Virus record (IMG/VR): IMGVR_UViG_3300023184_000025
Location: 62,001-126,000 of that record
Direction: 5' to 3' (one strand)
Length of the DNA: 64,000 nt
The notes beneath the pieces were generated by a model. The model saw only the letters and a list, made by a program, of their open reading frames with translations, searched no databases and was not told the DNA's origin. Each line of letters begins with the position of its first letter. Within the stretch, counting starts at the first letter, position 1. Shown one piece after another: positions 35 to 61,564 of the stretch. Both the position numbers and the translations under genes were made by a program.

Positions 35-484
35 TTATTTGGCACGATTGTTAAGATATTGTTCGTGTTGTATCCATTTATTTTTTACCAAGAATCCCCA
101 TTCACGTTTCTGTGTACCGGGCATGAACATGGTCCAACATTCTACACTAGGGTCTAGTTCAATGCGATGAAAACTATTAGCACTACAAGTGCGAAAATGA
201 CCAGGCTTCCGCCAATGTGCAATTTCTCCAACTTTCTCTCCTTGGTTATTAAACTGTGGAATCCATTCCCAGTAGCCACCTTTTAAAATGAGAGTGGCAT
301 AAGGCCAAGGATGGTCATGCACATCATCAGGATCTGATTTGAGAAACTTGTGTATAAAGATGTTAAATGGAAACCATTTCCTATCTTTGAGAAAAACATA
401 GTATCGTTCCAGATATGGTTCGTTGCTTTGTCGATCCAGAATCAATCGATACCGTCCTAGTCGATGCATGAGTGTTTTAATCAT
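35..484 (-). CDS. Cupin-like protein (HDHPW motif)
   Basis: HDHPW...FHRIEL cupin-type motifs; start moved to ATG 484, 6 nt after a -10 box. Confidence 0.6.
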   Translation of the reverse strand: MIKTLMHRLGRYRLILDRQSNEPYLERYYVFLKDRKWFPFNIFIHKFLKSDPDDVHDHPWPYATLILKGGYWEWIPQFNNQGEKVGEIAHWRKPGHFRTCSANSFHRIELDPSVECWTMFMPGTQKREWGFLVKNKWIQHEQYLNNRAK

Positions 485-490
485 ATATGT

Positions 491-519
491 ATTATACACT
501 AAAATAATTTATTAGTCAA
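491..519 (-). promoter_or_regulatory. Sigma70-type early promoter TTGACT-N17-TATAAT
   Basis: Consensus hexamers with 17-nt spacer. Confidence 0.8.
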
Positions 520-546
520 GTTTAATGTAGAGTTAAATATTGCACT

Positions 547-1206
547 ATGGAATTCTCCGCTACTAATTGGTTGACTTGGCAACGTGCTTCTAATGCTGTT
601 AATTTTTTGGATCCACCATTTAGATTAGGCAACTATTATCCAGATTGGTTCAAAAATCTTAAAGCTGACGTTAGACATTACTTGCCCCAAGGTCATATGC
701 AAAATAACACAGCCCGGGTATGTTTAGGCTTACGTGGTATCAATAGTGTGGGATGGACCATCATTGATCCAAAGTACCCATACATTGGCGGCGCCGTGGT
801 ATTCCATCCTGAGCAGTTACATGGTACCAAGTGGTGCGAAAAAGATTCTTCTGGTGAATATGTTTGGAAAATAGTCCTTAATGCATTACCCTGGAGAGCA
901 AAAATGGCTCCAGGATGGAGATTGATTGTTGGAGATTATCCATTGGCATTCAGTGAGGATTGGCATACATTTTCAGGTTGTGTGGATGCAAACTACAAGA
1001 TCAATGATGATGGCCAATTGGGATCCTTTTACAAATATGATGAGCCCATTGACCCCAACTTTAACTATTACAATATTGAATCAGTGATGGCTGTTAAACA
1101 GCACATGGTTGCTACTCCATCAGGAGCTGTGACTTTTTCAATCATTCCATATTATGATCCTGATTATCAGGCACCGATGTTCAAAGGCTATCCAAGTCTT
1201 GATTAA
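547..1206 (+). CDS. Hypothetical protein
   Basis: 219-aa ORF, TAAATA at 534-539, terminator after the stop. Confidence 0.7.
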   Translation: MEFSATNWLTWQRASNAVNFLDPPFRLGNYYPDWFKNLKADVRHYLPQGHMQNNTARVCLGLRGINSVGWTIIDPKYPYIGGAVVFHPEQLHGTKWCEKDSSGEYVWKIVLNALPWRAKMAPGWRLIVGDYPLAFSEDWHTFSGCVDANYKINDDGQLGSFYKYDEPIDPNFNYYNIESVMAVKQHMVATPSGAVTFSIIPYYDPDYQAPMFKGYPSLD

Positions 1207-1215
1207 TCAGTCAAG

Positions 1216-1242
1216 CAAAAGCCCTACTTGGTAGGGCTTTTG
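1216..1242. terminator. Bidirectional intrinsic terminator
   Basis: CAAAAGCCCTAC-TTG-GTAGGGCTTTTG between convergent genes. Confidence 0.8.
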
Positions 1243-1287
1243 GCAAATGTGTCCAGTTTGGGCTGGACAGCGAATCTAGATTCTAGA

Positions 1288-1557
1288 TTAGACTAAACCA
1301 AGGGCCAGAGCCTTGTAACCAGCGGCAACAATCTTGCGGCTTGGCTTGCCGAGTGCGTACTCGGTAACACGAATGCCATTACCGGCTGTGCGGCTGTTGG
1401 CATAAACAGCAAAGCCGTTTTGGCGGATGCGGCTTACTTCAGCACCCAAGTTACCAACGCCAAAGCGTTTCTTGGCCTCAGCTGGGCTGAGTGTTTCACC
1501 GCTTTGCAAGGCGCGGAAGACCTTGTAAGTTTTAGTAGTTTCGTTAAAATGTTTCAT
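1288..1557 (-). CDS. Small winged-helix/HTH DNA-binding protein
   Basis: LSPAEAKKRFGVGNLGAEVSRIR HTH-like pattern; SD AAAGG. Confidence 0.6.
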   Translation of the reverse strand: MKHFNETTKTYKVFRALQSGETLSPAEAKKRFGVGNLGAEVSRIRQNGFAVYANSRTAGNGIRVTEYALGKPSRKIVAAGYKALALGLV

Positions 1558-1612
1558 AGTTTTTACCTTTCAGATTTAAAATAATGATGTTTTGTTTTTG
1601 CATCATGTGCTT

Positions 1613-1641
1613 ATTATAATATGTTTAGCGTAGATATGCAA
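1613..1641 (-). promoter_or_regulatory. Sigma70-type promoter TTGCAT-N17-TATAAT
   Basis: Hexamers with 17-nt spacer. Confidence 0.65.
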
Positions 1642-1697
1642 TAGCGTTTGGCAAACTAAGTTAAAACAGTTTGCCGATTACATGGACAATGTTTATT

Positions 1698-1931
1698 TTA
1701 TGTCCACTTCAACAACGATATAGTGTAATCTTTTGGATCTGACCATGTAACCCATTCTATTTCGGCATCAACATTGAATCCGTTGATCTGCAAAAACTTG
1801 AGAGCTTCTTCTCGGGCCTGTAGTCGTTTGGTCTGATCAAAGTTGGCTAATCTTGCGCCAAATCTCTGATCCAACTCGGTGCGAAGTCTAGCAAAATTGT
1901 TAAGTTGGTGAAATCTAATGCGTTTGGTCAT
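1698..1931 (-). CDS. Hypothetical protein
   Basis: ATGA overlap with the upstream gene. Confidence 0.65.
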   Translation of the reverse strand: MTKRIRFHQLNNFARLRTELDQRFGARLANFDQTKRLQAREEALKFLQINGFNVDAEIEWVTWSDPKDYTISLLKWT

Positions 1932-2275
1932 ACTGTGATTTTAACGTGTTTACAGTCGCCGCGAAATCTAAAACCACTACAAGTACAAGAATAGGTTCCG
2001 TTAAGTTCTGACACTTTGTATTCATCACCTTTACTACCTTTTACAGTCCACACACGACCTTCAGGTTGTTCCTCTTTAGCCTGGAATTTCCATGAATTTG
2101 GCACTTCAACAAATTTGCGACCACGTACATCGAACCCAATGGGCTTTTTAAATCTAAATGGGGAGGCGGTGCCATGCCTTACATAGGCATACATTTTGCT
2201 TTTGGAATCATTTAAAAAGTAAACATGGTTTGGGAACTTATCGGCCCACTCGGTCACTTCAAGAAATGCTTTCAT
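1928..2275 (-). CDS. SWIM zinc-finger protein
   Basis: C-terminal CTC...CKH motif. Confidence 0.7.
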   Translation of the reverse strand: MKAFLEVTEWADKFPNHVYFLNDSKSKMYAYVRHGTASPFRFKKPIGFDVRGRKFVEVPNSWKFQAKEEQPEGRVWTVKGSKGDEYKVSELNGTYSCTCSGFRFRGDCKHVKITV

Positions 2276-2454
2276 GATTTTAACGTTACACTAGATTTGA
2301 ATACGCCACCTATTACCACTATGGCCAACCAAGTCTCAAACGAGTAAGGAATAGCCAGTGAAGGAAACAATGTATTCAATGACCAAATGGTTGCAACAGG
2401 GCCAATAACGACCAAAAATACAACGAATAGAATTGCAAGAAAAAGTTTTGACAT
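2272..2454 (-). CDS. Small two-TM membrane protein
   Basis: Hydrophobic 60 aa, SD AAGGA, coupled to the next gene. Confidence 0.65.
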   Translation of the reverse strand: MSKLFLAILFVVFLVVIGPVATIWSLNTLFPSLAIPYSFETWLAIVVIGGVFKSSVTLKS

Positions 2455-2458
2455 AAAA

Positions 2459-2617
2459 TTATCCTTTTATTTGATGACGGTATTCACGTTTAAGCCAATA
2501 TTTGTATTTGTGAAAATACTCTTTCATGGTCATACGTGGCTGGCCCCAACCATCGTGTTCGTCGCAGTTGTCTCTCCAGAGATCATTGAGCCATTGACGA
2601 AACGGTTTAGCAGTCAT
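2459..2617 (-). CDS. Small hypothetical protein (52 aa, not in the ORF track)
   Basis: MTAKPFRQWLNDLW...HQIKG; ATGA overlap; fills the gap exactly. Confidence 0.65.
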   Translation of the reverse strand: MTAKPFRQWLNDLWRDNCDEHDGWGQPRMTMKEYFHKYKYWLKREYRHQIKG

Positions 2618-2907
2618 ACTACCTCTAACATGTTAGCAGGAACTTTCCACAACCCAGTGGTCAATCGACCATTATTAGATTCACGAATTGTAATGTATTT
2701 GATAGCAATCTTTTCCACAGTACCAACAACAGTTACTCCACGTTTGGCACTGGTGAACTTTACGGTGCTACCAATGGTCACACTTCGTTTCTTTTGTTGC
2801 GTGAGTTGGACACGGGCAAATCGAATTGCATCACCAATGCTAACAAGCTCATCATTGGTAAATGATCCGGCAATAATTGCACTATTAATTTCTTGGATGG
2901 TAGTCAT
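2614..2907 (-). CDS. Hypothetical protein (C-terminal SH3-like beta barrel)
   Basis: SD AAGGA before MTTIQE. Confidence 0.65.
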   Translation of the reverse strand: MTTIQEINSAIIAGSFTNDELVSIGDAIRFARVQLTQQKKRSVTIGSTVKFTSAKRGVTVVGTVEKIAIKYITIRESNNGRLTTGLWKVPANMLEVV

Positions 2908-2915
2908 ATGTTTCC

Positions 2916-3122
2916 TTAACATTCAATATCAATATTACGACCTTTGTCTAGATCTAAACGAAGGTTTCTACTTACTCTCTCTGCAATGATTTGTTCAACT
3001 CTGCGTTCTTCAATCTTTTTAGCATAGTCTTCAGTTCGTTGTTTTTCCAGCCGATTTTGATCAATTCGATACTGTTCTAGATTGTGTTTTACAACACTTT
3101 GTTCTGCTCTTGAGATATTCAT
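2916..3122 (-). CDS. Hypothetical protein
   Basis: SD AAGGA; operon context. Confidence 0.6.
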   Translation of the reverse strand: MNISRAEQSVVKHNLEQYRIDQNRLEKQRTEDYAKKIEERRVEQIIAERVSRNLRLDLDKGRNIDIEC

Positions 3123-3134
3123 ACTTGCAATCCT

Positions 3135-3512
3135 TTACGCTACCTTGCGAAAATATTGGTAGGGCAGGCCCAGGTCGTAGCACAAGTATTCCCAATCACC
3201 ATTGGCTGAGCTAGATTGCATGATCCAGCGAAGTGCAGTCTCACGGTCACCAGCACCCATACAGATGGTGTTGATAACATGACGTTCAAACTTGTCGATG
3301 GCCTCGGCCTCAGAAGCCTTGCGAGCGATCTCTTCTTGCTCAATAGCTACACCAAGTCCTTCAAACTCAGCATCAAACTGCTCCAAAGTCCAAGTTGAAG
3401 TGTCAACACCACGTGGGCGAACACCGTAAGCGTCCTTGTACATATCCCAGTAAAGTTCCCGGGCTTGTTCTAGCTCTGACAGCTCGTCCCAAGATTTAAA
3501 TTCTGTAGTCAT
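3135..3512 (-). CDS. Hypothetical phage protein (YWDMYKDAYGVRPR motif)
   Basis: SD AAGGAG before MTTEFK; own promoter. Confidence 0.7.
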   Translation of the reverse strand: MTTEFKSWDELSELEQARELYWDMYKDAYGVRPRGVDTSTWTLEQFDAEFEGLGVAIEQEEIARKASEAEAIDKFERHVINTICMGAGDRETALRWIMQSSSANGDWEYLCYDLGLPYQYFRKVA

Positions 3513-3542
3513 TTGTGGCTCCTTATTTCTTACTATGTTCAT

Positions 3543-3571
3543 ATTATAGCAAATTGGGATTATTTGGTCAA
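3543..3571 (-). promoter_or_regulatory. Early promoter TTGACC-N17-TATAAT
   Basis: Member of a repeated promoter family. Confidence 0.85.
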
Positions 3572-3685
3572 CCGTTTTATCAACAACTGATTCAGGGTTG
3601 GTTTGAGTCCTAGCTTCTTACGGAGCAGTTCACCCAGAGTTGGCTTTTTGATTTTTGTCATCTTCTTTTGTTTTTTTGTTTTCAT
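3560..3685 (-). CDS. Highly basic 41-aa peptide (not in the ORF track)
   Basis: MKTKKQKKMTKIKKPTLGELLRKKLGLKPTLNQLLIKRLTK; ATG 6 nt after a -10 box. Confidence 0.55.
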   Translation of the reverse strand: MKTKKQKKMTKIKKPTLGELLRKKLGLKPTLNQLLIKRLTK

Positions 3686-3691
3686 GTTCTA

Positions 3692-3720
3692 ATTATAGCA
3701 AAAGGGCAATTATTGGTCAA
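3692..3720 (-). promoter_or_regulatory. Early promoter TTGACC-N17-TATAAT
   Basis: Repeated promoter family. Confidence 0.85.
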
Positions 3721-3950
3721 CCAAATGCTTTTACTAGCCCTGTGAGCCCAATAATTACACTTACAAAGTTAACAAACATCTGTGGTTTATTTGCAACACG
3801 GATTGTCCATATTAAAAATAAGATAGTTCCCACAAAAAATGTAAGGATATTGTAAGGATATGCCGCAGGTCCAACGGCGTTTAAGCTGTGGCCTGCAACA
3901 ATAAACAGGGCTCCAGCCCACTGTAGTATTTCGTTAGTATCTAATTTCAT
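3717..3950 (-). CDS. Small three-TM membrane protein (PnuC half-like)
   Basis: Three hydrophobic segments. Confidence 0.6.
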   Translation of the reverse strand: MKLDTNEILQWAGALFIVAGHSLNAVGPAAYPYNILTFFVGTILFLIWTIRVANKPQMFVNFVSVIIGLTGLVKAFG

Positions 3951-3956
3951 GTTATT

Positions 3957-3985
3957 ATTATAGCAAAATGGTAATTATTGGTCAA
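3957..3985 (-). promoter_or_regulatory. Early promoter TTGACC-N17-TATAAT
   Basis: Repeated promoter family. Confidence 0.85.
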
Positions 3986-4038
3986 CCAAAATTTGTTGTG
4001 AAAAAACAACAAGAATTTAATAAAATTTACCCATTTTG

Positions 4039-4068
4039 TGTCAACGATCTTGTGAGCGCAGGCGTTAT
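4039..4068 (+). promoter_or_regulatory. Putative ECF-sigma promoter TGTCAAC-N17-CGTT
   Basis: Same architecture at 49991-50020. Confidence 0.5.
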
Positions 4069-4119
4069 TATATTATACAGAGATAATTCTGTATATTTTA
4101 ACTTTAAAGGAAATTTACC

Positions 4120-4335
4120 ATGAAATTAGTCGCAACATTAATCGCTTCAGCATTTGCTGTCACTGCTTTTGCCGCAGAACCTGCCAAAAAAGAAGAAAAG
4201 AAAGCTGATGCCAAGCCTGCTGTTACAGCGCCGGCCAAGCCAGCACCTGCCGCAACTGCGCCAGCAACGCCTGCAAAAAGTGAGCCTGCTAAGAAGGACG
4301 CACCAAAAGCAGACGCAAAGACAGCCGCGAAATAA
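4120..4335 (+). CDS. Secreted Ala/Lys/Pro-rich small protein
   Basis: Signal peptide ending AFA, low-complexity body, SD AAGGA. Confidence 0.75.
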   Translation: MKLVATLIASAFAVTAFAAEPAKKEEKKADAKPAVTAPAKPAPAATAPATPAKSEPAKKDAPKADAKTAAK

Positions 4336-4499
4336 TCTAGAAGAAGATGATGACTTTGAGATCAACGACGAAGTCACATTTGGACGTAATCGCAGGAGTT
4401 CACAGTTTGGAAAAGTTATACACGAGGACGAAGACCTTTCCGATTATGTCCTAAATAGATTGTACTTGGCCAGGATGTTGGCCTTAAAAAAACGTCAGG

Positions 4500-4531
4500 A
4501 AGTTTGGGGGTAAAATCCCAAACTTTTTTTT
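4500..4531 (+). terminator. Intrinsic terminator
   Basis: AAGTTTGGG/CCCAAACTT stem plus T run. Confidence 0.75.
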
Positions 4532-4561
4532 GACTATTTTCTCAGTAGAAACCATTAGAGA

Positions 4562-4576
4562 TATTGCAACGCAACA
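4562..4576. promoter_or_regulatory. PhaR-like operator TATTGC-N3-GCAACA
   Basis: Near-identical to the palindrome at 11334-11348; abuts TAAATA 4577-4582. Confidence 0.5.
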
Positions 4577-4624
4577 TAAATACTCCGTAGAAACCACGAG
4601 TACCTACTGACAAGGACACATATA

Positions 4625-4801
4625 ATGACATATCTATCAAACAAAATGCTGTCTATCTTGGAACGTTTAAGTGAAATGTTCCCTGGTAGTAGTTACCAAA
4701 GCCGCTTGGAACAATATCTAAGCACCAAAGGCATTACCGATGCCGCACAGTTGGAAAATTATATCCGACATTTTAATTCTCAAAAGGAAAACTATCTATG
4801 A
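4625..4801 (+). CDS. Small protein, DUF3563-like (58 aa, not in the ORF track)
   Basis: SD AAGGA; RLEQYLSTKGITDAAQLENYIRHF. Confidence 0.6.
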   Translation: MTYLSNKMLSILERLSEMFPGSSYQSRLEQYLSTKGITDAAQLENYIRHFNSQKENYL

Positions 4802-4896
4802 AAAAAATCGTCAACACACTTTACAAAGGCTTAATTAACTGGGCCGAAACTATTGCCGCTTATCGCAACAGTAATGCCAGTAAACACTACTATTAA
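4798..4896 (+). CDS. 32-aa peptide
   Basis: ATGA overlap, SD AAGGA; MKKIVNTLYKGLINWAETIAAYRNSNASKHYY. Confidence 0.55.
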   Translation: MKKIVNTLYKGLINWAETIAAYRNSNASKHYY

Positions 4897-4897
4897 A

Positions 4898-4996
4898 ATG
4901 AACTTTATAGACACCGTAATAATGTTGCTACGCTGGAAGCAACAAGGGTGGGAAGTACATCCTGTTATTGATGATGACTTTACTGGCTGGTTTTAA
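4898..4996 (+). CDS. 32-aa peptide
   Basis: Starts 1 nt after the previous stop; MNFIDTVIMLLRWKQQGWEVHPVIDDDFTGWF. Confidence 0.45.
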   Translation: MNFIDTVIMLLRWKQQGWEVHPVIDDDFTGWF

Positions 4997-4997
4997 G

Positions 4998-5450
4998 TTA
5001 CAACAACCAACCTAGATCTAGACGCTGATGTATCCAGGGATAAATTGGCGTTTCAAAATCCATATACCAAATGCCATTCCAGCCCAGGTAATTGGCATGT
5101 ACGATCTTATCCTTGTTTCCTAGCCAATCGTCAGGATATGTTGGCTGATATTTAGAATAAACTTTGAAATCTGATTTGATATTTTGAAATCTAACAGAAT
5201 CAATAATCACTGCCATGTCTAGTTCTGGCGGCTGTATTTCTTTATAATTTTTATTAAAAAACTCAATGCTTAGTCTATGCTGTCCAGGATACACCGACTG
5301 TACAATTAGAAAATCCTGGCTATGTGAATCTGTAACTGTCCATAACACATGATCATCAAGCTTGATAGTATATTCAGGAACAGTTGTTACCATTCTTGTA
5401 CTGACTGAAAGATTAATTTTGATATCGTTTTTTTGCATAACCGTACTCAT
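4998..5450 (-). CDS. Hypothetical protein linked to radical SAM gene
   Basis: Overlaps the 3' end of the radical SAM gene. Confidence 0.65.
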   Translation of the reverse strand: MSTVMQKNDIKINLSVSTRMVTTVPEYTIKLDDHVLWTVTDSHSQDFLIVQSVYPGQHRLSIEFFNKNYKEIQPPELDMAVIIDSVRFQNIKSDFKVYSKYQPTYPDDWLGNKDKIVHANYLGWNGIWYMDFETPIYPWIHQRLDLGWLL

Positions 5451-6720
5451 CTAAAAATTCTGCTAGTTCTGGCACAAACTCACGCAAGTCATGTTCTCGC
5501 AATTGATCAAACTTAGTACAATAGTCAGTTAGCTCTTGTCTAACAGTTTCTATATTGACTCCAGTCTGGTACAACAATCCTATAACCATTTGTGCATGAT
5601 GGGATATTGATTCTACCACTCTTGATTGATTTCTAACATTAATATCGTGCAGTATATCTTTATCTTTAAGAATAAATCTTGACAGTCTTGATTTAATTAT
5701 TTCCTTAGCTGAATTAGGAAGGTAACAGGGTCTAAAAAACTCTGGACGATGCAGGACATTACTGTCAATAATAATAGAATGTTCTAGACAAAAATCTAAA
5801 AGTTTATCGTAATGCATCAGACTTAACAGTTGAGGAACTGAGCGTAATACTGTGCTAAATTTTTCATTGGTGCAAGCCAGATATTGTCGAATGTTGTCGA
5901 CAATCTTGTTAGTTTTTCCTGGGTATCGAATATAATCATTGCTAATATCAAGGTTTTCAATGCTGATTTCAATCTGCACAGATTTAAATTTTTCTAATTG
6001 TGTCATCAACTCAGGGTCGTAGATAGTTCCATTGGTTACAAAAGTCAGATGAAAATCTGTGTGATTGTTATTGCACAAGAACGTTATCAAATCTCTAAAT
6101 CGCTTGTGGTACAACGGTTCTCCGCCCATGACATGCAGACAAATAATATCATTGTTGTTTAACAAGTGATCACAGAATTTTCCCCAGGTGGGTGTATCGG
6201 TCCAGTCGTGTTTGATCGGAATACTGGAATCTCTTAGACCAATTTTATTCAAATCAGCGGCTAAGAGTGTGCTGTTAAATCCATCACACATTACGCAGGC
6301 CATATTGCAAATATTACTAAAACTGATATGATAAAATCTTGGACTAGATTTATCAGCATTAATAATTTTCCAAACAGGACTTTCTTCGGCGCTTTGTTGG
6401 AAATCCTGTCCCGGAAATATAGCAGCCTGCAGATTTCTGCGACTACGAAATGTTACTTCACTATGCTGATCTTCTTTATAACAACGATGACATCGGGCAA
6501 CAGAGTCTCCGTTGAGTATGTTTTTTCTTGCTGATTGAACTGATTTTGAATTTGAAAAATATTCATCCACAGTCATTAAATTAATATGCTCATTGCCCGG
6601 TAAGTCAGCACGATCAGCAAAATGACAAAAGTTCATTGTGCCGTCAGAATTGATCCTGACTTCAGTCCAGGGACTGATACAAAAAGTTTGTTGGTTGATA
6701 TTCAATTTATTTTGTTCCAT
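5413..6720 (-). CDS. Radical SAM protein with N-terminal SPASM/twitch-like Cys cluster
   Basis: CNMACVMC, GGEP, TNG motifs. Confidence 0.85.
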   Translation of the reverse strand: MEQNKLNINQQTFCISPWTEVRINSDGTMNFCHFADRADLPGNEHINLMTVDEYFSNSKSVQSARKNILNGDSVARCHRCYKEDQHSEVTFRSRRNLQAAIFPGQDFQQSAEESPVWKIINADKSSPRFYHISFSNICNMACVMCDGFNSTLLAADLNKIGLRDSSIPIKHDWTDTPTWGKFCDHLLNNNDIICLHVMGGEPLYHKRFRDLITFLCNNNHTDFHLTFVTNGTIYDPELMTQLEKFKSVQIEISIENLDISNDYIRYPGKTNKIVDNIRQYLACTNEKFSTVLRSVPQLLSLMHYDKLLDFCLEHSIIIDSNVLHRPEFFRPCYLPNSAKEIIKSRLSRFILKDKDILHDINVRNQSRVVESISHHAQMVIGLLYQTGVNIETVRQELTDYCTKFDQLREHDLREFVPELAEFLDEYGYAKKRYQN

Positions 6721-6748
6721 TGTTGTTACTTATCGTGGTAAATATAGG

Positions 6749-8326
6749 ATGCGAGACTTAATCAATATTCTAGATAACTTTGTGTTTGAAGCACGTGGTC
6801 TTAGTGCCAGAAATCCCGGCGATGAGTTTGTACGTACCGGATCCACTGATGATAAGGACAAAATTGTTTTTCAAGGCATGCAATTTTACCCAGATCCGGG
6901 AAAATATCCCAGTTACGAAGATATGATCGCGGCGTTTGATCAAGTACAACGATCAATCAAACACCCAATTGAAAAAATTAATCAACCGTCTGCACGTACA
7001 CTGGCATTTGCAATTGCACAATTTGATACTGCTGTTGGTCGTAGATATCTTGCCAAGTTTGCCTCGGACATTAAACCAGTACGCACCCAAAATACCTTTT
7101 TTCAAACAGTAGATATCCCTGGCGGATTTAATCAAGTTAGTGCAAGAGGCAGCAAAGAAAAAGTTGGATACAAGCCCAGCGATGTGTTAACTAATTTTAA
7201 GAGCCAAACTGCGGCCGGCATACTAGAACAAATTCGATCCAAGTTTGGCGCGGACAGCACTGAGTATCAGGCGGCAGCAATTTTTAACAAGTCCACACAG
7301 TTCCCAATTGTGGTTCCTGCAGGTAACATGGACTTTGGGGCTTTTCGAGATTATTTCTGCGAGATGTTACAACCTATTGCACTGATGAATAGCATGCCAG
7401 TCAAGGGCAACGCCGGTAAGGCCGCTGAACTATTTCTGGGTGGCAACTACAGTGATTGTGTTGTGTCATTCAATGAAGGTGTGGGCGGAGAACTCTATGA
7501 CAGTTTATTAGTAGCGCCAAATGGCAAACAGATTAAACTATCTAGTAAGGGCGCAAAAGGTGCAATGGCATCCAGTGTTAACTTACTCAAGAGTGTGCGT
7601 GAACTTGAAGCGGCAGGGATGACACAGTTTACTGAGCAGTATGCAGATGTAATTGATATCTTGGAAACCATCAACAAAGGCAATCACGACTCGGGACCAT
7701 TGAACCTTGCCATACAACTTGACATGATTGACAAAACTGAAGCACAACAGGTAATGACTTTAAAACAGTACGCTGGTGTAAAGGGCTTTGATATTGACAA
7801 TACCGACCTTACTGACAATCTCAAAGCAATCTACAAAGAACGCAAAGCTGATGATCCATCTAAAATTGTTCCGTTAAATCACCTGGTATCTAGCATTGCC
7901 TACAAAGTCTGTAACGAAATTAATTTAAAAACAAATTTCAGTGAAGCAGGTGCAGATATTCTCAACAACTCTGCGTTTGTTCAAATGTACACTGAAGCTA
8001 AAAAAGGCAAAGAAGAATTTATCATCACTGGGTTTACCACAGTATGGCCCAGCAAGTTGTTTACCGAAGTAACATTAGAAGCACAAAAGAGTTATTCAAG
8101 TACTTCAAGTTCAGGAGGCAAGCTGGTGTTTAATATCAACAAAGAACCTAGAGTAGAACTCAACGTAGAAAAGTCAGCTACTACAAATGCGCCAGGCGCA
8201 AACAAAGCCGGGGAGTTGGTAGACTATATTCCACCACGCAGTGATATCAAAGCGGCGGGTGATGTTGGCACTCCAAAGCACCCTGACCAGGCATTGGGTC
8301 GTAAGCGTCGCCCTGGTGGCCGTTAA
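6749..8326 (+). CDS. Large hypothetical protein, probably head-packaged; possible degenerate PD-(D/E)xK domain
   Basis: TAAATA 4 nt upstream of MRDLINIL; YDS...IKLSSKG motif. Confidence 0.6.
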   Translation: MRDLINILDNFVFEARGLSARNPGDEFVRTGSTDDKDKIVFQGMQFYPDPGKYPSYEDMIAAFDQVQRSIKHPIEKINQPSARTLAFAIAQFDTAVGRRYLAKFASDIKPVRTQNTFFQTVDIPGGFNQVSARGSKEKVGYKPSDVLTNFKSQTAAGILEQIRSKFGADSTEYQAAAIFNKSTQFPIVVPAGNMDFGAFRDYFCEMLQPIALMNSMPVKGNAGKAAELFLGGNYSDCVVSFNEGVGGELYDSLLVAPNGKQIKLSSKGAKGAMASSVNLLKSVRELEAAGMTQFTEQYADVIDILETINKGNHDSGPLNLAIQLDMIDKTEAQQVMTLKQYAGVKGFDIDNTDLTDNLKAIYKERKADDPSKIVPLNHLVSSIAYKVCNEINLKTNFSEAGADILNNSAFVQMYTEAKKGKEEFIITGFTTVWPSKLFTEVTLEAQKSYSSTSSSGGKLVFNINKEPRVELNVEKSATTNAPGANKAGELVDYIPPRSDIKAAGDVGTPKHPDQALGRKRRPGGR

Positions 8327-8898
8327 CGTGCTAGACGGCTGATACTATCGCAGATACCAAATGCAAGTGCTTCTTCTGCACTGAGCCAAACATCATGTGG
8401 TGGCAACAAGCATTGCTTGAGTTTTTCTTCATCAAGTCCAGTTGCCTGCTTATAAAGATTAACCATGCGTTTTTGGCACAGCTCAAATTCTTTAATTGTG
8501 GCAAACAATTCATGCGCTTTGCCTTCGGATCCCCAGCTGAACTGGTGACTTAGAATACTGGTATTTGGAGTTAGAAGTCTACGTCCAGGTGAGCCAGCTA
8601 AAAAGATCAATAAACCTGCTGAAGAAATTTGTCCTAACCCAACTGTTTTAATTGGGATATTGCTACTTTGCATAACATCAATTAGGGCAAAGGCAGATTC
8701 AACTTCTCCACCCTCGCTACAAATCATCAACAGCAATTCTTTTTTCTTTTTCTTAACAACATAGTTGGCATGCAAAATCCACTCGACTACTGGCTTAACG
8801 CTTTCGGTGTCAACTGGACCCATAAAGGCATACATACCAGCTTCAAGTAAGCTTTGTCCAGGGCTAATGTAATCTTCATCATCTTTAATTTGTGTCAT
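8323..8898 (-). CDS. clpP: ClpP-like protease subunit
   Basis: ICSEGG, GQISSAG, ILSHQ, DVWLSAEEA motifs. Confidence 0.85.
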   Translation of the reverse strand: MTQIKDDEDYISPGQSLLEAGMYAFMGPVDTESVKPVVEWILHANYVVKKKKKELLLMICSEGGEVESAFALIDVMQSSNIPIKTVGLGQISSAGLLIFLAGSPGRRLLTPNTSILSHQFSWGSEGKAHELFATIKEFELCQKRMVNLYKQATGLDEEKLKQCLLPPHDVWLSAEEALAFGICDSISRLAR

Positions 8899-8918
8899 GT
8901 AATTTCGCTCAAAAGAAA

Positions 8919-8962
8919 AGGGCTAGCTAAAAGTGTGTTATAATATACTTTTAGCTAACCCT
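8919..8962. other. Long intergenic inverted repeat
   Basis: AGGGCTAGCTAAAAGTGT / ATACTTTTAGCTAACCCT. Confidence 0.6.
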
Positions 8963-8978
8963 AGTACTTATGGTGAAC

Positions 8979-9566: not shown

Positions 9567-9575
9567 AATTTTTCC

Positions 9576-9698
9576 TTAACGAGTTTTAATCCATTCGCCG
9601 GCTTTTTTAAGATCTTCGCCGGCACCACCTACTGCCCCGCCCATGGTTCCACAGGCTGTGAGCATCGAGACAAGTAAAATAACAACTGCTTTTTTCAT
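9576..9698 (-). CDS. Entericidin EcnA/B-like small lipoprotein (40 aa, not in the ORF track)
   Basis: LTAC-GTMGGAVGGAGEDLKKAGE. Confidence 0.65.
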   Translation of the reverse strand: MKKAVVILLVSMLTACGTMGGAVGGAGEDLKKAGEWIKTR

Positions 9699-9855: not shown

Positions 9856-9884
9856 ATTATACATAAAATGCAATATCTAGTCAA
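9856..9884 (-). promoter_or_regulatory. Early promoter TTGACT-N17-TATAAT
   Basis: Consensus hexamers. Confidence 0.75.
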
Positions 9885-10443: not shown

Positions 10444-10781
10444 GAGCAATCTCTTGTCAAGTGCAGTAGATGTTGATTAATCAACCAGTTTGTGCGACCA
10501 CTGTGAATACTTTGTCGCTGATAGTGTTCTTCATTGTCTGTCCAACGGCTCCAGGGTTGTGTTAAATTTCCCACACCTGCTAGCATACGTTCATCTCTTC
10601 CAGAACGCATGCTCTGCAGAAACTTAATTTGCTGTTCTTTAATACGACAATTAATTTGAAAGCTTTCCAAATCAATAGCATGTATCGGCTGTTGTACAGC
10701 ACAGCCACTAAACAGGCTGACAAATATAACGGATGCGCCAAATGCGGCTACGAACCTGGCGTTGAAATTCTGCAGAATCAT
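10440..10781 (-). CDS. Putative lipoprotein
   Basis: FSGC lipobox-like. Confidence 0.6.
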   Translation of the reverse strand: MILQNFNARFVAAFGASVIFVSLFSGCAVQQPIHAIDLESFQINCRIKEQQIKFLQSMRSGRDERMLAGVGNLTQPWSRWTDNEEHYQRQSIHSGRTNWLINQHLLHLTRDCS

Positions 10782-10923
10782 TTTGGGTACTCTGAGTTTC
10801 TAACCATCTGATTATGGCATGTCGATTGGCACAATCATCTGGAATGAGTGTGACGTCAACAGGCGGCCGGGTAGATGTACACCCTGTAATTAATAAAATG
10901 GATAAAAGAAAAATCCTGTTCAT
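10708..10923 (-). CDS. Putative small lipoprotein
   Basis: ITGC lipobox; ATG 6 nt after a -10 box. Confidence 0.6.
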   Translation of the reverse strand: MNRIFLLSILLITGCTSTRPPVDVTLIPDDCANRHAIIRWLETQSTQNDSAEFQRQVRSRIWRIRYICQPV

Positions 10924-10929
10924 GTAGCT

Positions 10930-10958
10930 ATTATACACAAACAGGATTTATTGGTCAA
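10930..10958 (-). promoter_or_regulatory. Early promoter TTGACC-N17-TATAAT
   Basis: Repeated promoter family. Confidence 0.85.
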
Positions 10959-11317: not shown

Positions 11318-11348
11318 ATTATATATGATAAATTGTTGCGTTGCAACA
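11318..11348 (-). promoter_or_regulatory. Sigma70 promoter (TTGCAA-N17-TATAAT) with PhaR-like palindrome TGTTGC-N3-GCAACA over the -35
   Basis: Perfect palindrome at 11334-11348. Confidence 0.6.
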
Positions 11349-29695: not shown

Positions 29696-29713
29696 TTAAC
29701 ATTAACTATTATA

Positions 29714-30148
29714 TTATGAAGCGTAGTTAATTGCAATAGTTTTTGGCTTGGCTGAGTCAGGAATTACACGCTCTAGCTTGACAGATAAGATTCCGTCTTT
29801 GGCCACAGCATCCTTAACTTCAACATGATCACCTAGACTAAATGTGCGAATAAACTTGCGAGCACTAATGCCCTGATGACGGAAAATATATCCTTCGGGC
29901 GTTGTTTCTGTTTTTTCGCCGGTGATAATAATTTCACCGTCTTTAACAGTGATTTCAAGATCGCCTTGATTAAATCCGGCCACGGCAACCTGTACTTCGT
30001 AGGTGTTTTCACCTGTTTCTACAATGTTATATGGAGGATAATTAGTTGCGGCGTGATCGATCTGATTAACAATACGATCAAATAGTCTATCAACGCCAAT
30101 AGCGTTACGATAGAAGGGGGTGATATCAAAAGATGTGATTTTAGTCAT
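29714..30148 (-). CDS. Small heat-shock protein (Hsp20/IbpA-like)
   Basis: NYPPYNI, AVAGF, GISARKF, GIL motifs. Confidence 0.92.
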   Translation of the reverse strand: MTKITSFDITPFYRNAIGVDRLFDRIVNQIDHAATNYPPYNIVETGENTYEVQVAVAGFNQGDLEITVKDGEIIITGEKTETTPEGYIFRHQGISARKFIRTFSLGDHVEVKDAVAKDGILSVKLERVIPDSAKPKTIAINYAS

Positions 30149-36787: not shown

Positions 36788-36816
36788 ATTATAGCAAATT
36801 GGGAATTATCGGTCAA
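36788..36816 (-). promoter_or_regulatory. Early promoter TTGACC-N17-TATAAT
   Basis: Repeated promoter family. Confidence 0.85.
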
Positions 36817-37268: not shown

Positions 37269-37297
37269 ATTATAACAAAACGGGAATTATCGGTCAA
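37269..37297 (-). promoter_or_regulatory. Early promoter TTGACC-N17-TATAAT
   Basis: Repeated promoter family. Confidence 0.85.
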
Positions 37298-37879: not shown

Positions 37880-37908
37880 AGTATAGCAAATTAACAATTA
37901 TCGGTCAA
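37880..37908 (-). promoter_or_regulatory. Early promoter TTGACC-N17-TATACT
   Basis: Repeated promoter family. Confidence 0.8.
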
Positions 37909-38408: not shown

Positions 38409-38437
38409 ATTATAAAATAATTCCAATTTTGTGTCAA
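38409..38437 (-). promoter_or_regulatory. Early promoter TTGACA-N17-TATAAT
   Basis: Perfect sigma70 consensus. Confidence 0.85.
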
Positions 38438-58779: not shown

Positions 58780-58782
58780 AAT

Positions 58783-59847
58783 TTAAATAATCTCTAAAAT
58801 TGTTTTTCCAAATTCTGCTAAATTGTTTGCCTGTCGTTGTCGATCAAAAAATAATTTTTGATTGTGTTGGCAAATGTCATCAATTTCATTTGTATGGGTT
58901 TTACTACTATCAACCAATTGTTTAATTGCCTGAACAACTTTTTGCATTCGTAAATCTAGGTTTTTTTCTGAATCATACGATTCGTCACAGAAATTTGCAA
59001 ATGTTTTAAATCCCTGGGTTTTTAATTTAGCTAGAATATTTGTATCTCCTAAAATAACAAACGGGCGGCGGTGCGCTAATATTTTAAATGTTTTTTCTGT
59101 ACAATATGGCTCCGTTATGTCTCTAACAGTGGTTTCCAATGCCACATTAACTTTGGCAATTGCATGCATTTTTTTGTGAGGCAAATGATCTAGAGATCTG
59201 CTCATATTGGTATCATAGAAACTAGGATAACATGTATGTAAAGAATACTTTTCTAAATTTACTTTATTAAAGTAAACTTCAATTCCCAATTGCTGAAATC
59301 TAAGATCAGTTTCTAAAATATCTTGCAAATTGTCTGTGACTATGGTTAAATTGTCTCGAAGCTGATCAAACAGTTTCATGAATTGTATTCTATGTGGCCT
59401 AGGACTACCAAATGGTATTACCACATCATATATTGCATTACCCAACGGTTCTCTGTTTATTTCGTAGTATAGTGTAGTGTTGGTAAACTCATTGAATATA
59501 TGGTGGTCCCAATAGTCAAACCCAACAGTTGTATAATTTTTAAAATTATTCAAATGTTTATGACCAGTTATCAATAGTGCATTTGGAGGGAACCATTCAT
59601 CAGATGTCCAATAGTCATGATGGCCTTCAAATACACAACCATAGTTATCAACTTCAGAATCTAGGAATCCTTTCCAATCTTTAATTACAAAATTTTTTTC
59701 AAAGTTTCCAAACTCAAGTTTGTCAAACTGATTTTGTTGACTATAGTAAGCACTAATTCCTGCATACACCCAAGATTGTGTATAAAATGGAGCATGCTGG
59801 GGGAGATCTTTTTTTAGTATTTCTAAAGATGTAAATTTATTTTTCAT
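58783..59847 (-). CDS. Putative glycosyltransferase-like protein
   Basis: RPHR, VALET, TEKTFK...PFV, GFKTF motifs. Confidence 0.55.
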   Translation of the reverse strand: MKNKFTSLEILKKDLPQHAPFYTQSWVYAGISAYYSQQNQFDKLEFGNFEKNFVIKDWKGFLDSEVDNYGCVFEGHHDYWTSDEWFPPNALLITGHKHLNNFKNYTTVGFDYWDHHIFNEFTNTTLYYEINREPLGNAIYDVVIPFGSPRPHRIQFMKLFDQLRDNLTIVTDNLQDILETDLRFQQLGIEVYFNKVNLEKYSLHTCYPSFYDTNMSRSLDHLPHKKMHAIAKVNVALETTVRDITEPYCTEKTFKILAHRRPFVILGDTNILAKLKTQGFKTFANFCDESYDSEKNLDLRMQKVVQAIKQLVDSSKTHTNEIDDICQHNQKLFFDRQRQANNLAEFGKTILEII

Positions 59848-60830
59848 GATAATTTTTTGACAAGTTGTTTTTTCTTCATTTCTATTTTGATTTTACTAGT
59901 TTCTCTATTTGCAAATATACTTTGCAATGTTGCTAGCTTGCCAAATTTAATTACAGCATCATTGACATCTTTAACGTCACTGGGCCAACTAGGAATACTT
60001 ACTGCCCATCCCAGTTCTACTGCACGATCAATTAATTCAACACCAGCTTTGTCCATATCGGGCACCACAGTGATTTCTTTGCCCAGGCTACGTATTAATC
60101 TAGCTTGACTATCGCTTACAGTATTATGCATTAGTGCAATACCGCCAATGCTTAGTGCATCAAATATACCTTCCATTACTAAAACATGCTGCCAGTTGTT
60201 GTGCTGTAAGTCAGTGCCAAATACGTAGCCTGGTTGTGAGTGATTAATATATTTAGGAATTTTGTTATCTAAGAATCTAGCACACCAGCCTATGATCTTG
60301 CCGTCATATGTGAATGGCACAGTGACATGCAGTCTGGTCCAGTGTATACTGTCGTTTTTGACAGCAGTCATGATTGGATAGTCTTCAGGAACACATCGTT
60401 GCCTTAGGTAATTCCAGTAGTACTGATGTTCGGGCGTGACTTGTTCAGTGTATGGTGGAAAGTCATCTGACTCGTCAAACTCAATTGCACTTACGGCATT
60501 GGATACCCGTTGTCTATCTTCCAAGATGCCGTGTATGTTGCGATGTCTTAGGCTTTCAAGATTGAGCATTTCAATTTCGTTGTCGGGTACACCCATCCAT
60601 CCCATAAGTCGTTTAGCTTTAAAGCTAACTGTGCGACCTAACACAAAACTGGCTGTGTAGGAACAGTTGAAACAGTGATAACTCCAACCTTGTTCAGTTA
60701 TCTTGATGCCCCCACGCCCACGGCGGTCCGCACTATTACCATTATGGGTACAACACACAGCATTAAAACTGGTCCAGCCCTGTGGGCTAGATTTTTTCTT
60801 AACAGGTAGATAATTGATTATGTCTATCAC
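59844..60830 (-). CDS. DNA primase (zinc-binding + TOPRIM)
   Basis: CC..H / HCFNC, EGIFDA, PDMDKAG, KDVND motifs. Confidence 0.9.
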   Translation of the reverse strand: MIDIINYLPVKKKSSPQGWTSFNAVCCTHNGNSADRRGRGGIKITEQGWSYHCFNCSYTASFVLGRTVSFKAKRLMGWMGVPDNEIEMLNLESLRHRNIHGILEDRQRVSNAVSAIEFDESDDFPPYTEQVTPEHQYYWNYLRQRCVPEDYPIMTAVKNDSIHWTRLHVTVPFTYDGKIIGWCARFLDNKIPKYINHSQPGYVFGTDLQHNNWQHVLVMEGIFDALSIGGIALMHNTVSDSQARLIRSLGKEITVVPDMDKAGVELIDRAVELGWAVSIPSWPSDVKDVNDAVIKFGKLATLQSIFANRETSKIKIEMKKKQLVKKLS

Positions 60831-61564
60831 TTAGACATTATAACACGATCTATCTCTTGTTGCAACATGTTTTGTAGTATTATATGTCCGTTTTCATTGG
60901 GGTGTCCGCCCGGAAACGTTAATTCCATTTCGTTTGGATGTTGGCGTAGCCAATGTACAAAATTAAATCCTGGCAATATTTTGGAAGGAACTGTGATTTC
61001 TTCTTGTGGCGGGCTTATGTCCCAGATCAACATTGGTAGATTTCTTCTAGCTGCCACACCATCAAAAAAGTACAACGCTTGTTCGTAGTTCAGCATTGAC
61101 AATGGGTCACTTTCACTCAGTACCATGTATCGTTTAATCATATCGGTCCATTCGCGAGTCACAGCACCGTCTTGGACTCCAGCATGTACCCACGAACTGT
61201 GAACAAATCTATCCCACGTGGGAGCATTAGGGTAAGTTTCATGATTAGGGTTATAAAAACTCATTCGACTACCTTCGGTTAATCCTACTAGAACAATACA
61301 TTCTTCAGGTCTAGGTTCGTTGCGTAACCACCACAAAAAAGTCCACATAGTGCTCTGTAAACTGCCACCAGGTATGCCAAAGTTTTTTGTGGGCAATTGA
61401 TAATGTCTACCAAGTAATCCCAGGAAGCATTTTCGTTCACGATAAGACGTATTCTCTACTAGACTTGGATGTGCATCAGGATTGTGTTTTAACAACTCTG
61501 GGTCAATTAACTCGTCGCCCCAGAACCAACTGTCTCCAAACCCAACAATTTTTTTAAATTTCAT
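60827..61564 (-). CDS. SGNH/GDSL hydrolase-like protein
   Basis: FGDSW, NFGIPGGS, GHPNENGH motifs. Confidence 0.7.
   Translation of the reverse strand: MKFKKIVGFGDSWFWGDELIDPELLKHNPDAHPSLVENTSYRERKCFLGLLGRHYQLPTKNFGIPGGSLQSTMWTFLWWLRNEPRPEECIVLVGLTEGSRMSFYNPNHETYPNAPTWDRFVHSSWVHAGVQDGAVTREWTDMIKRYMVLSESDPLSMLNYEQALYFFDGVAARRNLPMLIWDISPPQEEITVPSKILPGFNFVHWLRQHPNEMELTFPGGHPNENGHIILQNMLQQEIDRVIMSK
60837..60865 (-). promoter_or_regulatory. Sigma70 promoter TTGCAA-N17-TATAAT inside the upstream gene
   Basis: GTG of primase 6 nt after the -10. Confidence 0.6.

What the first reader, a model, noticed from the sequence alone, without database searches (positions are those of the whole stretch)
482..60865. 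Repeated sigma70 promoter family, many copies placing a start codon at +1 (leaderless mRNAs)
Thirteen TTGACN/TTGCAN-N17-TATAAT(or TATACT) promoters occur, with -10 boxes at 491, 1613, 3543, 3692, 3957, 9856, 10930, 11318, 36788, 37269, 37880, 38409 and 60837. In eight (491, 1613, 3692, 3957, 9856, 10930, 38409, 60837) an ATG/GTG lies exactly 6 nt after the -10. For genes 35-484, 3560-3685, 3717-3950, 10708-10923 and primase this codon is the gene start with no room for an SD. Inference: systematic leaderless translation.
Basis: partly seen in the sequence, partly recalled or inferred. Interest (0 to 1): 0.65.

Follow-up and report, generated by a model that had tools for sequence, protein, structure and literature searches.

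The report
Phage promoters that start mRNAs at ATG
A 345-kb freshwater jumbo phage carries about 40 copies of one strong bacterial-type promoter, and in about a fifth of them (and at its DNA primase gene) the gene's start codon sits where transcription should begin, a layout kept across dozens of related phages, which points to routine translation of mRNAs without a ribosome-binding leader.

Summary
All 13 -10 boxes lie at the stated coordinates, all on the minus strand. Genome-wide (345,154 bp) there are 40 TTGACN-N17-TATA[AC]T sites, all on one strand.

The +1 region is a conserved Y-A-T-R motif, so ATG there partly arises by chance. Sites 1613, 9856 and 38409 open only 20-, 8- and 10-codon frames ahead of Shine-Dalgarno (SD)-led genes. 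ORF 3560-3685 is ambiguous.

Leaderless starts are well supported for 35-484, 3717-3950, 10708-10923 and the primase (59844-60830).
- Distances from -10 to ORF-opening ATGs spike at 6 nt, with almost nothing up to about 20 nt. Two related genomes repeat this.
- Across relatives the 6-nt spacing is kept while the spacer sequence varies: 44 of 47, 41 of 41 and 45 of 45 distinct upstream sequences for three gene families.
- N-termini match homologues, and 10708-10923 begins with a lipoprotein signal peptide.
- A conserved terminator-like hairpin encloses that gene's -10 box and AUG.

No transcription start was mapped. This is a new member of a known kind: leaderless genes on promoter cassettes like those of T4.

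The parts
491..519 (-). Family promoter (TTGACT-N17-TATAAT). ATG at 484-482 lies 6 nt after the -10.
35..484 (-). Leaderless candidate gene, 149 aa (phrog_4786, named 'cysteine dioxygenase').
   Evidence: PHROG E 2e-35. Residues 1-13 are conserved in homologues from many phages. Some of those homologues are SD-led and others have -10-N5/6-ATG. This rules out the TTG at codon 14 as the start.
1613..1641 (-). Weaker promoter-like site (TTGCAT-N17-TATAAT). The ATG at +1 opens only 20 codons. The real gene 1288-1557 (winged-helix protein) is SD-led about 50 nt downstream.
3543..3571 (-). Family promoter of the leadered class: ATA at +1, a leader of about 24 nt with TAAGGAG, then gene 3135-3512.
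3692..3720 (-). Family promoter with ATG 6 nt after the -10.
3560..3685 (-). Basic 41-aa ORF with an ambiguous start: the +1 ATG (3685) or the in-frame ATG at 3661 (33 aa).
   Evidence: The peptide is conserved in relatives L046 and L024. Both carry AAGGAA 6 nt before codon 9, mirroring the leadered cassette. In the window that SD has decayed to AAAAGAAG.
3957..3985 (-). Family promoter with ATG 6 nt after the -10.
3717..3950 (-). Leaderless candidate gene, 77-aa membrane protein (weak DUF6552 match over nearly its full length).
   Evidence: Pfam E 9e-5, below the curated cutoff. Of 47 distinct upstream sequences in relatives, 44 keep TATAAT-like -10, N6, ATG, with 18 different N6 among the 43 that also keep a TTGAC-like -35; two or three relatives are SD-led instead.
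9856..9884 (-). Family promoter. The ATG at +1 opens 8 codons. The SD-led (AGGAGG) gene 9695-9823 follows.
10930..10958 (-). Family promoter with ATG 6 nt after the -10.
10708..10923 (-). Leaderless candidate gene, 71-aa predicted lipoprotein. The N-terminus MNRIFLLSILLITGC reads as a signal peptide with lipobox.
   Evidence: Translation. There is no other in-frame start. Relatives at 53-54% identity keep a promoter 5-6 nt before the ATG.
10911..10949 (-). A 16-bp hairpin followed by a U-rich run. It encloses the -10 box and the AUG of 10708-10923 and looks like an intrinsic terminator for read-through RNA.
   Evidence: Folding gives -18.2 kcal/mol, z -4.3. RNA started at +1 folds at only -3.4. 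The pairing is kept through compensatory changes in L173, L174 and G003.
11318..11346 (-). Weaker promoter-like site (TTGCAA-N17-TATAAT), leadered. The SD-led gene 10976-11251 follows.
36788..36816 (-). Family promoter, leadered class; gene 36280-36756.
37269..37297 (-). Family promoter, leadered class; gene 36813-37235.
37880..37908 (-). Family promoter (TATACT), leadered class; gene 37589-37849.
38409..38437 (-). Family promoter. The ATG at +1 opens 10 codons. The SD-led gene 38136-38369 follows.
60837..60865 (-). Primase promoter (TTGCAA-N17-TGT-TATAAT, an extended -10), embedded in the 3' end of the upstream ORF 60827-61564. GTG lies 6 nt after the -10.
59844..60830 (-). DNA primase, 328 aa, leaderless candidate. 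It starts with GTG here and ATG in 43 of 45 distinct upstream sequences of the family (the window's own lineage included).
   Evidence: Toprim_2 and phrog_47 matches. All 45 distinct upstream sequences show TAnnnT-N6-start, TG at -15/-14 and TTG at -35, with 21 different N6. The layout also holds in G003, G005 and Pseudomonas phage PA5oct.
45057..45085 (-). It lies in frame inside ORF 44865-45290 and is probably a chance match.
29708..29736 (-).

Best explanation
The window is part of a 345-kb jumbo phage from lake metagenomes. The phage is distantly related to the Rak2, PA5oct and Atu_ph07 group of phages that infect Proteobacteria.

Its small early genes lie behind copies of one sigma-70-type promoter cassette: TTGACC, 17 bp, then TGn-TATAAT. 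In relatives a terminator T-run often precedes the cassette. The cassette comes in two forms.
- Leadered form: transcription should start at an A 7 nt after the -10, and a conserved leader of about 24 nt carries AAGGAG before the ATG.
- Leaderless form: the same A is the first base of the gene's ATG, so the mRNA would have no 5' UTR and no SD.

Such mRNAs would be bound at their 5'-terminal AUG by ribosomes, through the known leaderless pathway. In the window this applies to 35-484, 3717-3950 and 10708-10923, possibly to 3560-3685, and, from a weaker extended -10 promoter, to the primase.

One inferred consequence is that translation is tied to the gene's own promoter. A read-through transcript would carry the AUG internally without an SD. 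At 10708-10923 it would fold or terminate in a hairpin that contains the AUG.

Shown: the motifs, their spacing, their conservation and the N-termini. Inferred: the transcription start and the mode of translation.
For: Promoter family.
- There are 40 of 40 TTGACN-N17-TATA[AC]T sites on the gene strand; base-shuffled sequence gives none above 12 bits with a weight matrix built from them.
- The window holds 15 against 0.15-0.2 expected per strand.

Geometry.
- Among the 40 promoters, ATG occurs 11 times at offset 6 and never at offsets 3-5 or 7-13. Seven of the 11 open 40 codons or more, with no SD-led in-frame start.
- For all TATA[AC]T on the minus strand, 12 ORF-opening ATGs lie at offset 6, against a mean of 1.7 at offsets 0-20.
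- Relatives G003 (5 of 39) and G005 (8 of 58) repeat the pattern.

Conservation of spacing with variable spacer sequence.
- DUF6552-like gene: 44 of 47 distinct upstream sequences.
- GIY-YIG-like gene: 41 of 41, with N6 or N5.
- Primase: 45 of 45. PA5oct has TTGACA-17-TATAAT-GTGCGC-GTG.

N-termini.
- Residues 1-13 of 35-484 are conserved in SD-led homologues.
- The phrog_11279 match of another leaderless candidate (genome 126843-127343) starts at residue 1 and profile position 1.
- 10708-10923 begins with a lipoprotein signal peptide.

Other support.
- A hairpin plus U-run encloses the -10 and the AUG, and compensatory changes preserve it.
- Of 32 candidates in three genomes, 29 use ATG, and their first 40 nt are slightly less structured than the first 40 nt of SD-led coding sequences (median -2.2 against -3.1 kcal/mol, p 0.02).
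Against: - No 5' ends were mapped. The one RNA run is held as contigs, its sequences are diverged relatives, and one contig spans the promoter.
- ATG at +1 is expected fairly often because of the conserved Y-A-T-R start motif. Eight of 28 such ATGs in three genomes open only short frames.
- By my crude gene caller about 40% of genes lack a recognisable SD, so missing an SD is not distinctive in this genome.
- The window's primase starts with GTG, which the leaderless pathway in E. coli uses poorly (established knowledge).
- ORF 3560-3685 may start at an SD-led internal ATG.
- The host is unknown, so its capacity for leaderless translation is unknown.
Confidence: 0.75

Rival explanations
1. All the '+1 ATG' cases are by-products of the conserved Y-A-T-R start motif. 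The real starts would be downstream codons, as in the leadered cassettes.
For: ATA (36) and ATG (28) differ by one base at the same position. Sites 1613, 9856, 38409 and genome 283498 are exactly this: a short frame followed by an SD-led gene. ORF 3560-3685 may be an in-frame version of the same thing.
Against: Twenty of 28 such ATGs open 40 codons or more, where random sequence would give about 7% (my estimate from base composition). There is no SD-led in-frame alternative for 3717-3950, 10708-10923 or genome 309083. N-terminal residues are conserved and functionally needed: a signal peptide, and what reads as the first strand of the GIY-YIG-like fold (my reading of the sequence). The spacing is kept while the spacer sequence drifts.
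Confidence: 0.05
2. The promoters are real, but these genes are translated mainly from longer read-through transcripts by SD-independent internal initiation. The -10 lies next to the ATG only because the genome is tightly packed.
For: About 40% of called genes lack a recognisable SD. The genes are densely arrayed on one strand. The AU-rich -10 region could help ribosomes bind (inference).
Against: Packing alone does not predict an exact 6-nt spacing in 44 of 47, 35 of 41 (the other 6 at 5 nt) and 45 of 45 distinct upstream sequences, nor the absence of ATG at offsets 7-13. At 10708-10923 a read-through RNA would hide the AUG in a -18 kcal/mol hairpin followed by a U run. T-runs lie just upstream of many cassettes in relatives.
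Confidence: 0.12
3. The repeats matter chiefly as recombination cassettes that shuffle small genes, like the promoter-early stem-loop elements (PeSLs) of T4-type phages. Whether a given copy is leaderless would then be selectively neutral.
For: In metagenome contigs many pieces match only the promoter and then diverge on both sides (tables 5 and 7). Neighbouring genes differ between relatives while the cassettes stay. PeSLs are described in PMC2839356 and PMC4122927.
Against: This is not exclusive of leaderless expression. The same gene families stay leaderless across lineages down to 37-52% protein identity, which argues for selection on the arrangement. Switches to SD-led forms do occur for the same genes.
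Confidence: 0.05

Closest known systems
Leaderless phage and transposon mRNAs: lambda cI from PRM, P2 gene V, Tn1721 tetR (established knowledge; review PMC9031893)
   Same: A sigma-70 promoter whose start site is the A of the start codon. There is no SD. The 5'-terminal AUG is recognised directly by ribosomes.
   Different: Those are single regulatory genes. Here a repeated cassette supplies many genes, including a replication enzyme, and the layout is conserved across a clade of jumbo phages. No start site is mapped here.
PeSL promoter/terminator cassettes of T4-type phages (PMC2839356, PMC4122927)
   Same: Repeated composite terminator plus early-promoter motifs flank small variable genes on one strand. 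There are signs of cassette-mediated shuffling.
   Different: I did not find a leaderless form mentioned in what I read of PeSLs (abstract and outline of PMC4122927; abstract opening of PMC2839356). Here the cassette has a leadered form with a fixed SD leader and a form that starts at ATG. Recombination was not tested.
Promoters of Pseudomonas jumbo phage PA5oct: 32 putative promoters with TTGAC and TATAATA motifs (PMC7318152)
   Same: The consensus is the same in a distant cultured relative (primase 30% identical). Its primase gene has TTGACA-17-TATAAT with GTG 6 nt downstream.
   Different: That paper does not mention leaderless transcripts: a text search for UTR, Shine and start codon gave 0 hits. 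Only 9 strict matches occur in PA5oct.
Jumbo phages with mapped transcription starts: phiKZ (PMC8244752) and AR9 (PMC5312081)
   Same: Large phage genomes with repeated early promoters.
   Different: phiKZ has no leaderless transcript, and AR9 has 5' UTRs of 26-491 nt. Both use phage-encoded RNA polymerases and other promoter motifs.
Leaderless genes of Actinobacteria and Deinococcus (TANNNT-N6-7-A/GTG; review PMC9031893)
   Same: The -10-to-start geometry is the same, and GTG occurs as a leaderless start (the primase here).
   Different: The phage's relatives infect Proteobacteria, and it encodes a betaproteobacterial-type tmRNA. Its promoters have a strong -35.

Membership tests
Sigma-70-type promoter | -35 TTGACA-like and -10 TATAAT-like hexamers 17 +/- 1 bp apart, far more frequent than chance and oriented with the genes | tested here: met
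   40 of 40 sites lie on the gene strand. The window has 15 against 0.15-0.2 per strand in shuffles. TG lies upstream of the -10 in many copies.
Sigma-70-type promoter | Drives transcription initiation by the host RNA polymerase holoenzyme | not testable with these tools
   No raw RNA reads with 5' ends were on hand; only contigs.
Leaderless mRNA gene | The transcription start coincides with the start codon, or lies within a few nt of it | tested here: inconclusive
   Only the geometry could be tested. The start codon's A is the 7th nt after the -10, the usual start position, and a pyrimidine precedes it in the cassette family. No 5' mapping was done.
Leaderless mRNA gene | The codon at +1 is the true N-terminus of the protein | tested here: met
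   Met for 35-484, 3717-3950, 10708-10923 and the primase, through homologue N-termini and the signal peptide. Not met for 1613, 9856 and 38409. Unclear for 3560-3685.
Leaderless mRNA gene | AUG start codon (needed in E. coli; GUG is also used in mycobacteria) | tested here: met
   29 of 32 candidates in three genomes use ATG. The window's primase uses GTG, while 43 of 45 distinct upstream sequences of the family have ATG.
Leaderless mRNA gene | The arrangement is kept by selection and is not a one-off | tested here: met
   The spacing is fixed at 6 nt (sometimes 5) with 18, 10 and 21 different spacer sequences in three gene families.
PeSL-type mobile promoter/terminator cassette (T4-type phages) | A composite terminator stem-loop plus early promoter flanking small variable genes | tested here: inconclusive
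   T-runs directly precede many cassettes in relatives, and two promoters per genome sit inside terminator-like hairpins. Terminators upstream of each window cassette were not scored one by one.
PeSL-type mobile promoter/terminator cassette (T4-type phages) | Cassettes act as recombination points that swap genes | tested here: inconclusive
   Contigs match the promoter alone and diverge on both sides. The gene content between cassettes differs among relatives. No breakpoint analysis was done.

The most novel reading that the evidence does not exclude
The phage lineage does more than tolerate leaderless mRNAs: it favours them. It carries its own IF1 (also found in relatives G003 and G005) and an initiator-type tRNA-fMet (also in G003). 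A published review reports that both stimulate leaderless translation in vitro, the initiator tRNA much more than it stimulates SD-led translation. It also uses promoter-inside-terminator hairpins, so that certain genes can be expressed only from their own leaderless start. Together these would form a phage-encoded programme that shifts host translation towards 5'-AUG mRNAs for early and replication genes.
Probability: 0.15. Interest if true: 0.8.

Novelty: new member of a known kind. Interest (0 to 1): 0.5.

Why it matters
Leaderless mRNAs are regarded as rare in Proteobacteria such as E. coli, and in phages they are known mostly from single repressor genes. Here one repeated promoter cassette appears to deliver a sizeable share of a jumbo phage's early genes, and its primase, as leaderless messages. 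The layout is conserved across many uncultured freshwater relatives and, for the primase, reaches the cultured Pseudomonas phage PA5oct, which makes it testable.

It also matters for annotation. Gene callers that require an SD or pick the longest frame mis-start these genes. PA5oct's primase is annotated from a GTG that directly abuts the -10 box.

If the link to the phage's own IF1 and initiator tRNA held, it would give a function to translation genes that huge phages often carry.

Tried and rejected
- A megablast of window 1-12000 against 50,697 phage records found nothing. The more sensitive blastn matched only the nrdAB genes, at about 64% identity.
- RNA evidence failed. The only RNA run holding related sequence (X20) is stored as contigs, its sequences are under 95% alike, and one contig runs through the promoter. 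It says nothing about starts.
- Using absence of an SD as a criterion proved weak. My simple caller finds no SD for about 40% of genes in all three genomes.
- Genome sites 215566 (SbcD-like) and 212067 (SbcC-like) have TATAAT-N6-start in this genome. The SbcC-like arrangement is not kept in G003, and G005 has only TACAAT-N5 with no clear -35. The SbcD-like one was not compared. I do not count either.
- Genome 172895 (48 aa, GTG) lies in a stretch nearly identical in G003, so it is not informative.
- Atu_ph07's primase has a nearby TATAAT but a leader of about 20 nt with AAGG, so it is not leaderless.
- Searches of the genome for ribosomal protein S21, IF3 and S1 domains were negative.
- The PA5oct supplementary promoter table is not held in the library.
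- Literature searches for 'leaderless' with 'jumbo phage', 'PA5oct' or 'cappable-seq' found no report of this arrangement.
- The large protein searches, structure prediction and complex prediction were not needed and were not run.


Full report
**What the window is.** The window is positions 62,001-126,000 of a 345,154-bp virus record, 40% G+C and estimated 99% complete. Nearly identical DNA occurs in lake and other freshwater metagenomes from several studies. No close relative is in the phage collection. The nrdAB genes are about 64% identical in DNA to those of Rak2, CBB and PBECO4-type jumbo phages. The primase protein is 27-33% identical to those of Agrobacterium phage Atu_ph07, Pseudomonas phage PA5oct, Sinorhizobium phage Phosso, CBB and GAP32. 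It is therefore an uncultured member of the large group of jumbo myoviruses that infect Proteobacteria.

**The observation.**
Dinucleotide shuffles give 0.15-0.2 per strand.
- The two extra sites have their -10 at 29708 and 45057.
- In the whole genome TTGACN-N17-TATA[AC]T occurs 40 times, always on the minus strand. The consensus is GGTTGACCAATAATTCCCATTTTGCTATAAT, which includes a TGn extension of the -10.

**Two forms of one cassette.** Downstream of the -10 the copies fall into two classes.
- The leadered class reads TATAAT, six bases ending in a pyrimidine, ATA, then a conserved stretch such as GTAATTAAAAAGGAG, then 5-6 bases and ATG.
- The second class has ATG where the first has ATA, and that ATG opens the gene.

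Across 137 such promoters in three genomes the bases after the -10 follow Y at -1, A at +1, T at +2 and A or G at +3. ATA occurs 36 times and ATG 28 times. This fits the usual rule that RNA polymerase starts at a purine about 7 nt after the -10, preceded by a pyrimidine (established knowledge). It also means that an ATG at this position is, on its own, no evidence for a leaderless gene.

**Is it more than chance?** Yes, once ORF length is taken into account.
- Among the 40 promoters, ATG occurs 11 times at offset 6, never at offsets 3-5 or 7-13, and then again from offset 21 onwards, where the SD-led starts lie.
- Seven of the 11 open frames of 41-149 codons with no SD-led in-frame start. The other four open 8-23 codons and are followed by an SD-led gene.
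- For every TATA[AC]T on the minus strand (279 sites), ATGs that open 40 codons or more number 12 at offset 6. The mean at the other offsets from 0 to 20 is 1.7.
- I fetched two related genomes whole: G003 (346,856 bp) and G005 (353,123 bp). Their primases are 61% and 37% identical to the window's. They show the same two-peaked distribution, with 5 of 39 and 8 of 58 promoters placing an ORF-opening ATG at offset 6.

**Gene by gene in the window.**
- *35-484 (149 aa).* It matches phrog_4786. Its first 13 residues are conserved in homologues from many other phages. Some of these have a plain SD before the same ATG, and others have -10-N5 or N6-ATG. This excludes the TTG at codon 14 that I had considered.
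- *3717-3950 (77 aa, membrane protein, weak DUF6552 match).* There are 47 distinct upstream sequences among relatives down to 52% identity. Of these, 44 keep a TATAAT-like box, exactly six bases, then ATG, with 18 different six-base spacers. Two or three relatives have an SD-led start instead.
- *10708-10923 (71 aa).* It begins MNRIFLLSILLITGC, a lipoprotein signal peptide, and has no other in-frame start. Two relatives at 53-54% identity keep the arrangement.
- *Primase (59844-60830).* Its promoter lies inside the end of the upstream ORF, has a weaker -35 (TTGCAA) and an extended -10, and is followed after six bases by GTG. In 45 distinct upstream sequences from relatives, all have TAnnnT, six bases, then the start codon. 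All have TG at -15/-14 and TTG at -35. There are 21 different spacers, with ATG in 43 and GTG in 2. G003 and G005 agree. The cultured phage PA5oct has TTGACA, 17 bases, TATAAT, GTGCGC, GTG, followed by codons that resemble the window's N-terminus. Its annotation starts instead at the GTG that abuts the -10.
- *3560-3685 (41 aa, very basic).* The start is ambiguous. The peptide is conserved in two relatives, but there an AAGGAA lies six bases before an in-frame ATG at codon 9, just where leadered cassettes have their SD.
- *Sites 1613, 9856 and 38409.* Each is a short frame (20, 8 and 10 codons) ahead of an SD-led gene.

**Outside the window.** Further candidates in the same genome are:
- a GIY-YIG-like protein at genome 308742-309083 (weak PHROG matches to GIY-YIG homing endonucleases), with 41 of 41 distinct upstream sequences leaderless at N6 or N5;
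- ORFs at genome 44085 and 47007;
- a 166-aa protein at genome 126843-127343, whose PHROG match starts at residue 1 and profile position 1;
- a 102-aa protein on the other strand at genome 245432, conserved with the same geometry in G003.

Several gene families switch between leaderless and SD-led forms among the three genomes. This suggests that the hosts can use both.

**A hairpin that argues for the mechanism.** At 10911-10949 a 16-bp stem followed by a U-rich run encloses the -10 box and the AUG of the lipoprotein gene.
- As RNA read through from upstream it folds at -18.2 kcal/mol (z -4.3).
- RNA begun at the AUG holds only the 3' arm and folds at -3.4 kcal/mol.
- The pairing is kept through compensatory changes in L173, L174 and a G003 copy.

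A transcript from upstream would thus terminate, or hide the AUG, a few codons into the gene. Only a transcript begun at the gene's own promoter could be translated, and that transcript has no leader. Similar promoter-in-terminator designs occur once or twice per genome.

**Weaknesses.**
- No 5' end was mapped. The only RNA run is stored as contigs of diverged relatives.
- About 40% of genes lack an SD by my crude caller.
- GTG at the window's primase would be a poor leaderless start in E. coli.
- The host is unknown.

**Comparison with what is known.**
- The mechanism matches lambda cI and other single leaderless phage genes.
- The repeated terminator/promoter cassettes resemble the PeSLs of T4-type phages (PMC2839356, PMC4122927).
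- The motif itself was reported for PA5oct, without mention of leaderless starts (PMC7318152).
- Mapped jumbo phages phiKZ and AR9 have no leaderless transcripts.
- Four literature searches found no report of this arrangement.

I file it as a new member of a known kind, with moderate interest.

**The more novel reading.** The phage encodes IF1 (also in G003 and G005). It also encodes an initiator-type tRNA with the C1xA72 mismatch and three G-C pairs in the anticodon stem (also in G003). A review states that both stimulate leaderless translation in vitro (PMC9031893). This is circumstantial, and I give it 15%.

Noticed in passing
Genome G000:C1:287900-288233 (minus strand), outside the window; locus L281:426-770: The phage encodes a two-piece (permuted) tmRNA with tag ANDEQFALAA. 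It matches Rfam beta_tmRNA (RF01850) over its full length at 120 bits. This hints at a betaproteobacterial host.
   Followed up: partly
Genome G000:C1:41696-41914 (minus strand), outside the window; locus L284: A translation initiation factor IF1 homologue: Pfam PF01176 at 72 bits, 72 aa, GTG start. It is also present in relatives G003 and G005.
   Followed up: partly
Genome G000:C1:293608-307992, outside the window: There are 28 tRNA genes. The CAT-anticodon tRNA at 299000-299074 has the hallmarks of an initiator tRNA: a C1xA72 mismatch and a GGG/CCC anticodon stem. G003 has a copy 91% identical.
   Followed up: partly
Window 10911-10949 (minus strand); also genome 30589, G003 47874 and 333718, G005 339959: Promoters sit inside terminator-like hairpins. 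The 5' arm lies in the promoter spacer, the -10 lies in the loop or stem, the 3' arm lies at or after +1, and a T-run follows.
   Followed up: partly
Window 3533-3573 and 3956-3994; read laying tables 5 and 7: Many metagenome contigs match only the promoter cassette and then continue into unrelated sequence on either side. Some join one cassette directly to another. This is what cassette-mediated gene shuffling would produce.
   Followed up: no
Locus L285:365-379 (PA5oct, MK797984 about 145,878-145,892): The annotated primase CDS of PA5oct starts at a GTG that directly abuts the TATAAT box. A second GTG 6 nt after the box fits the homologous N-terminus and the geometry seen here, so the start is probably mis-annotated.
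   Followed up: partly
Window 1288-1557 (minus strand): A winged-helix (HTH_39) protein of 89 aa. Its PHROG match covers only profile positions 65-145 of 149, so homologues carry about 60 more N-terminal residues.
   Followed up: no
Whole genome and relatives G003, G005: Only about 55-60% of genes called by a simple codon-usage caller have a recognisable SD (4 bases or more of AAGGAGG) near a plausible start. This is despite the very strong SD in the leadered cassettes. It may reflect caller error or real SD-independent initiation.
   Followed up: no
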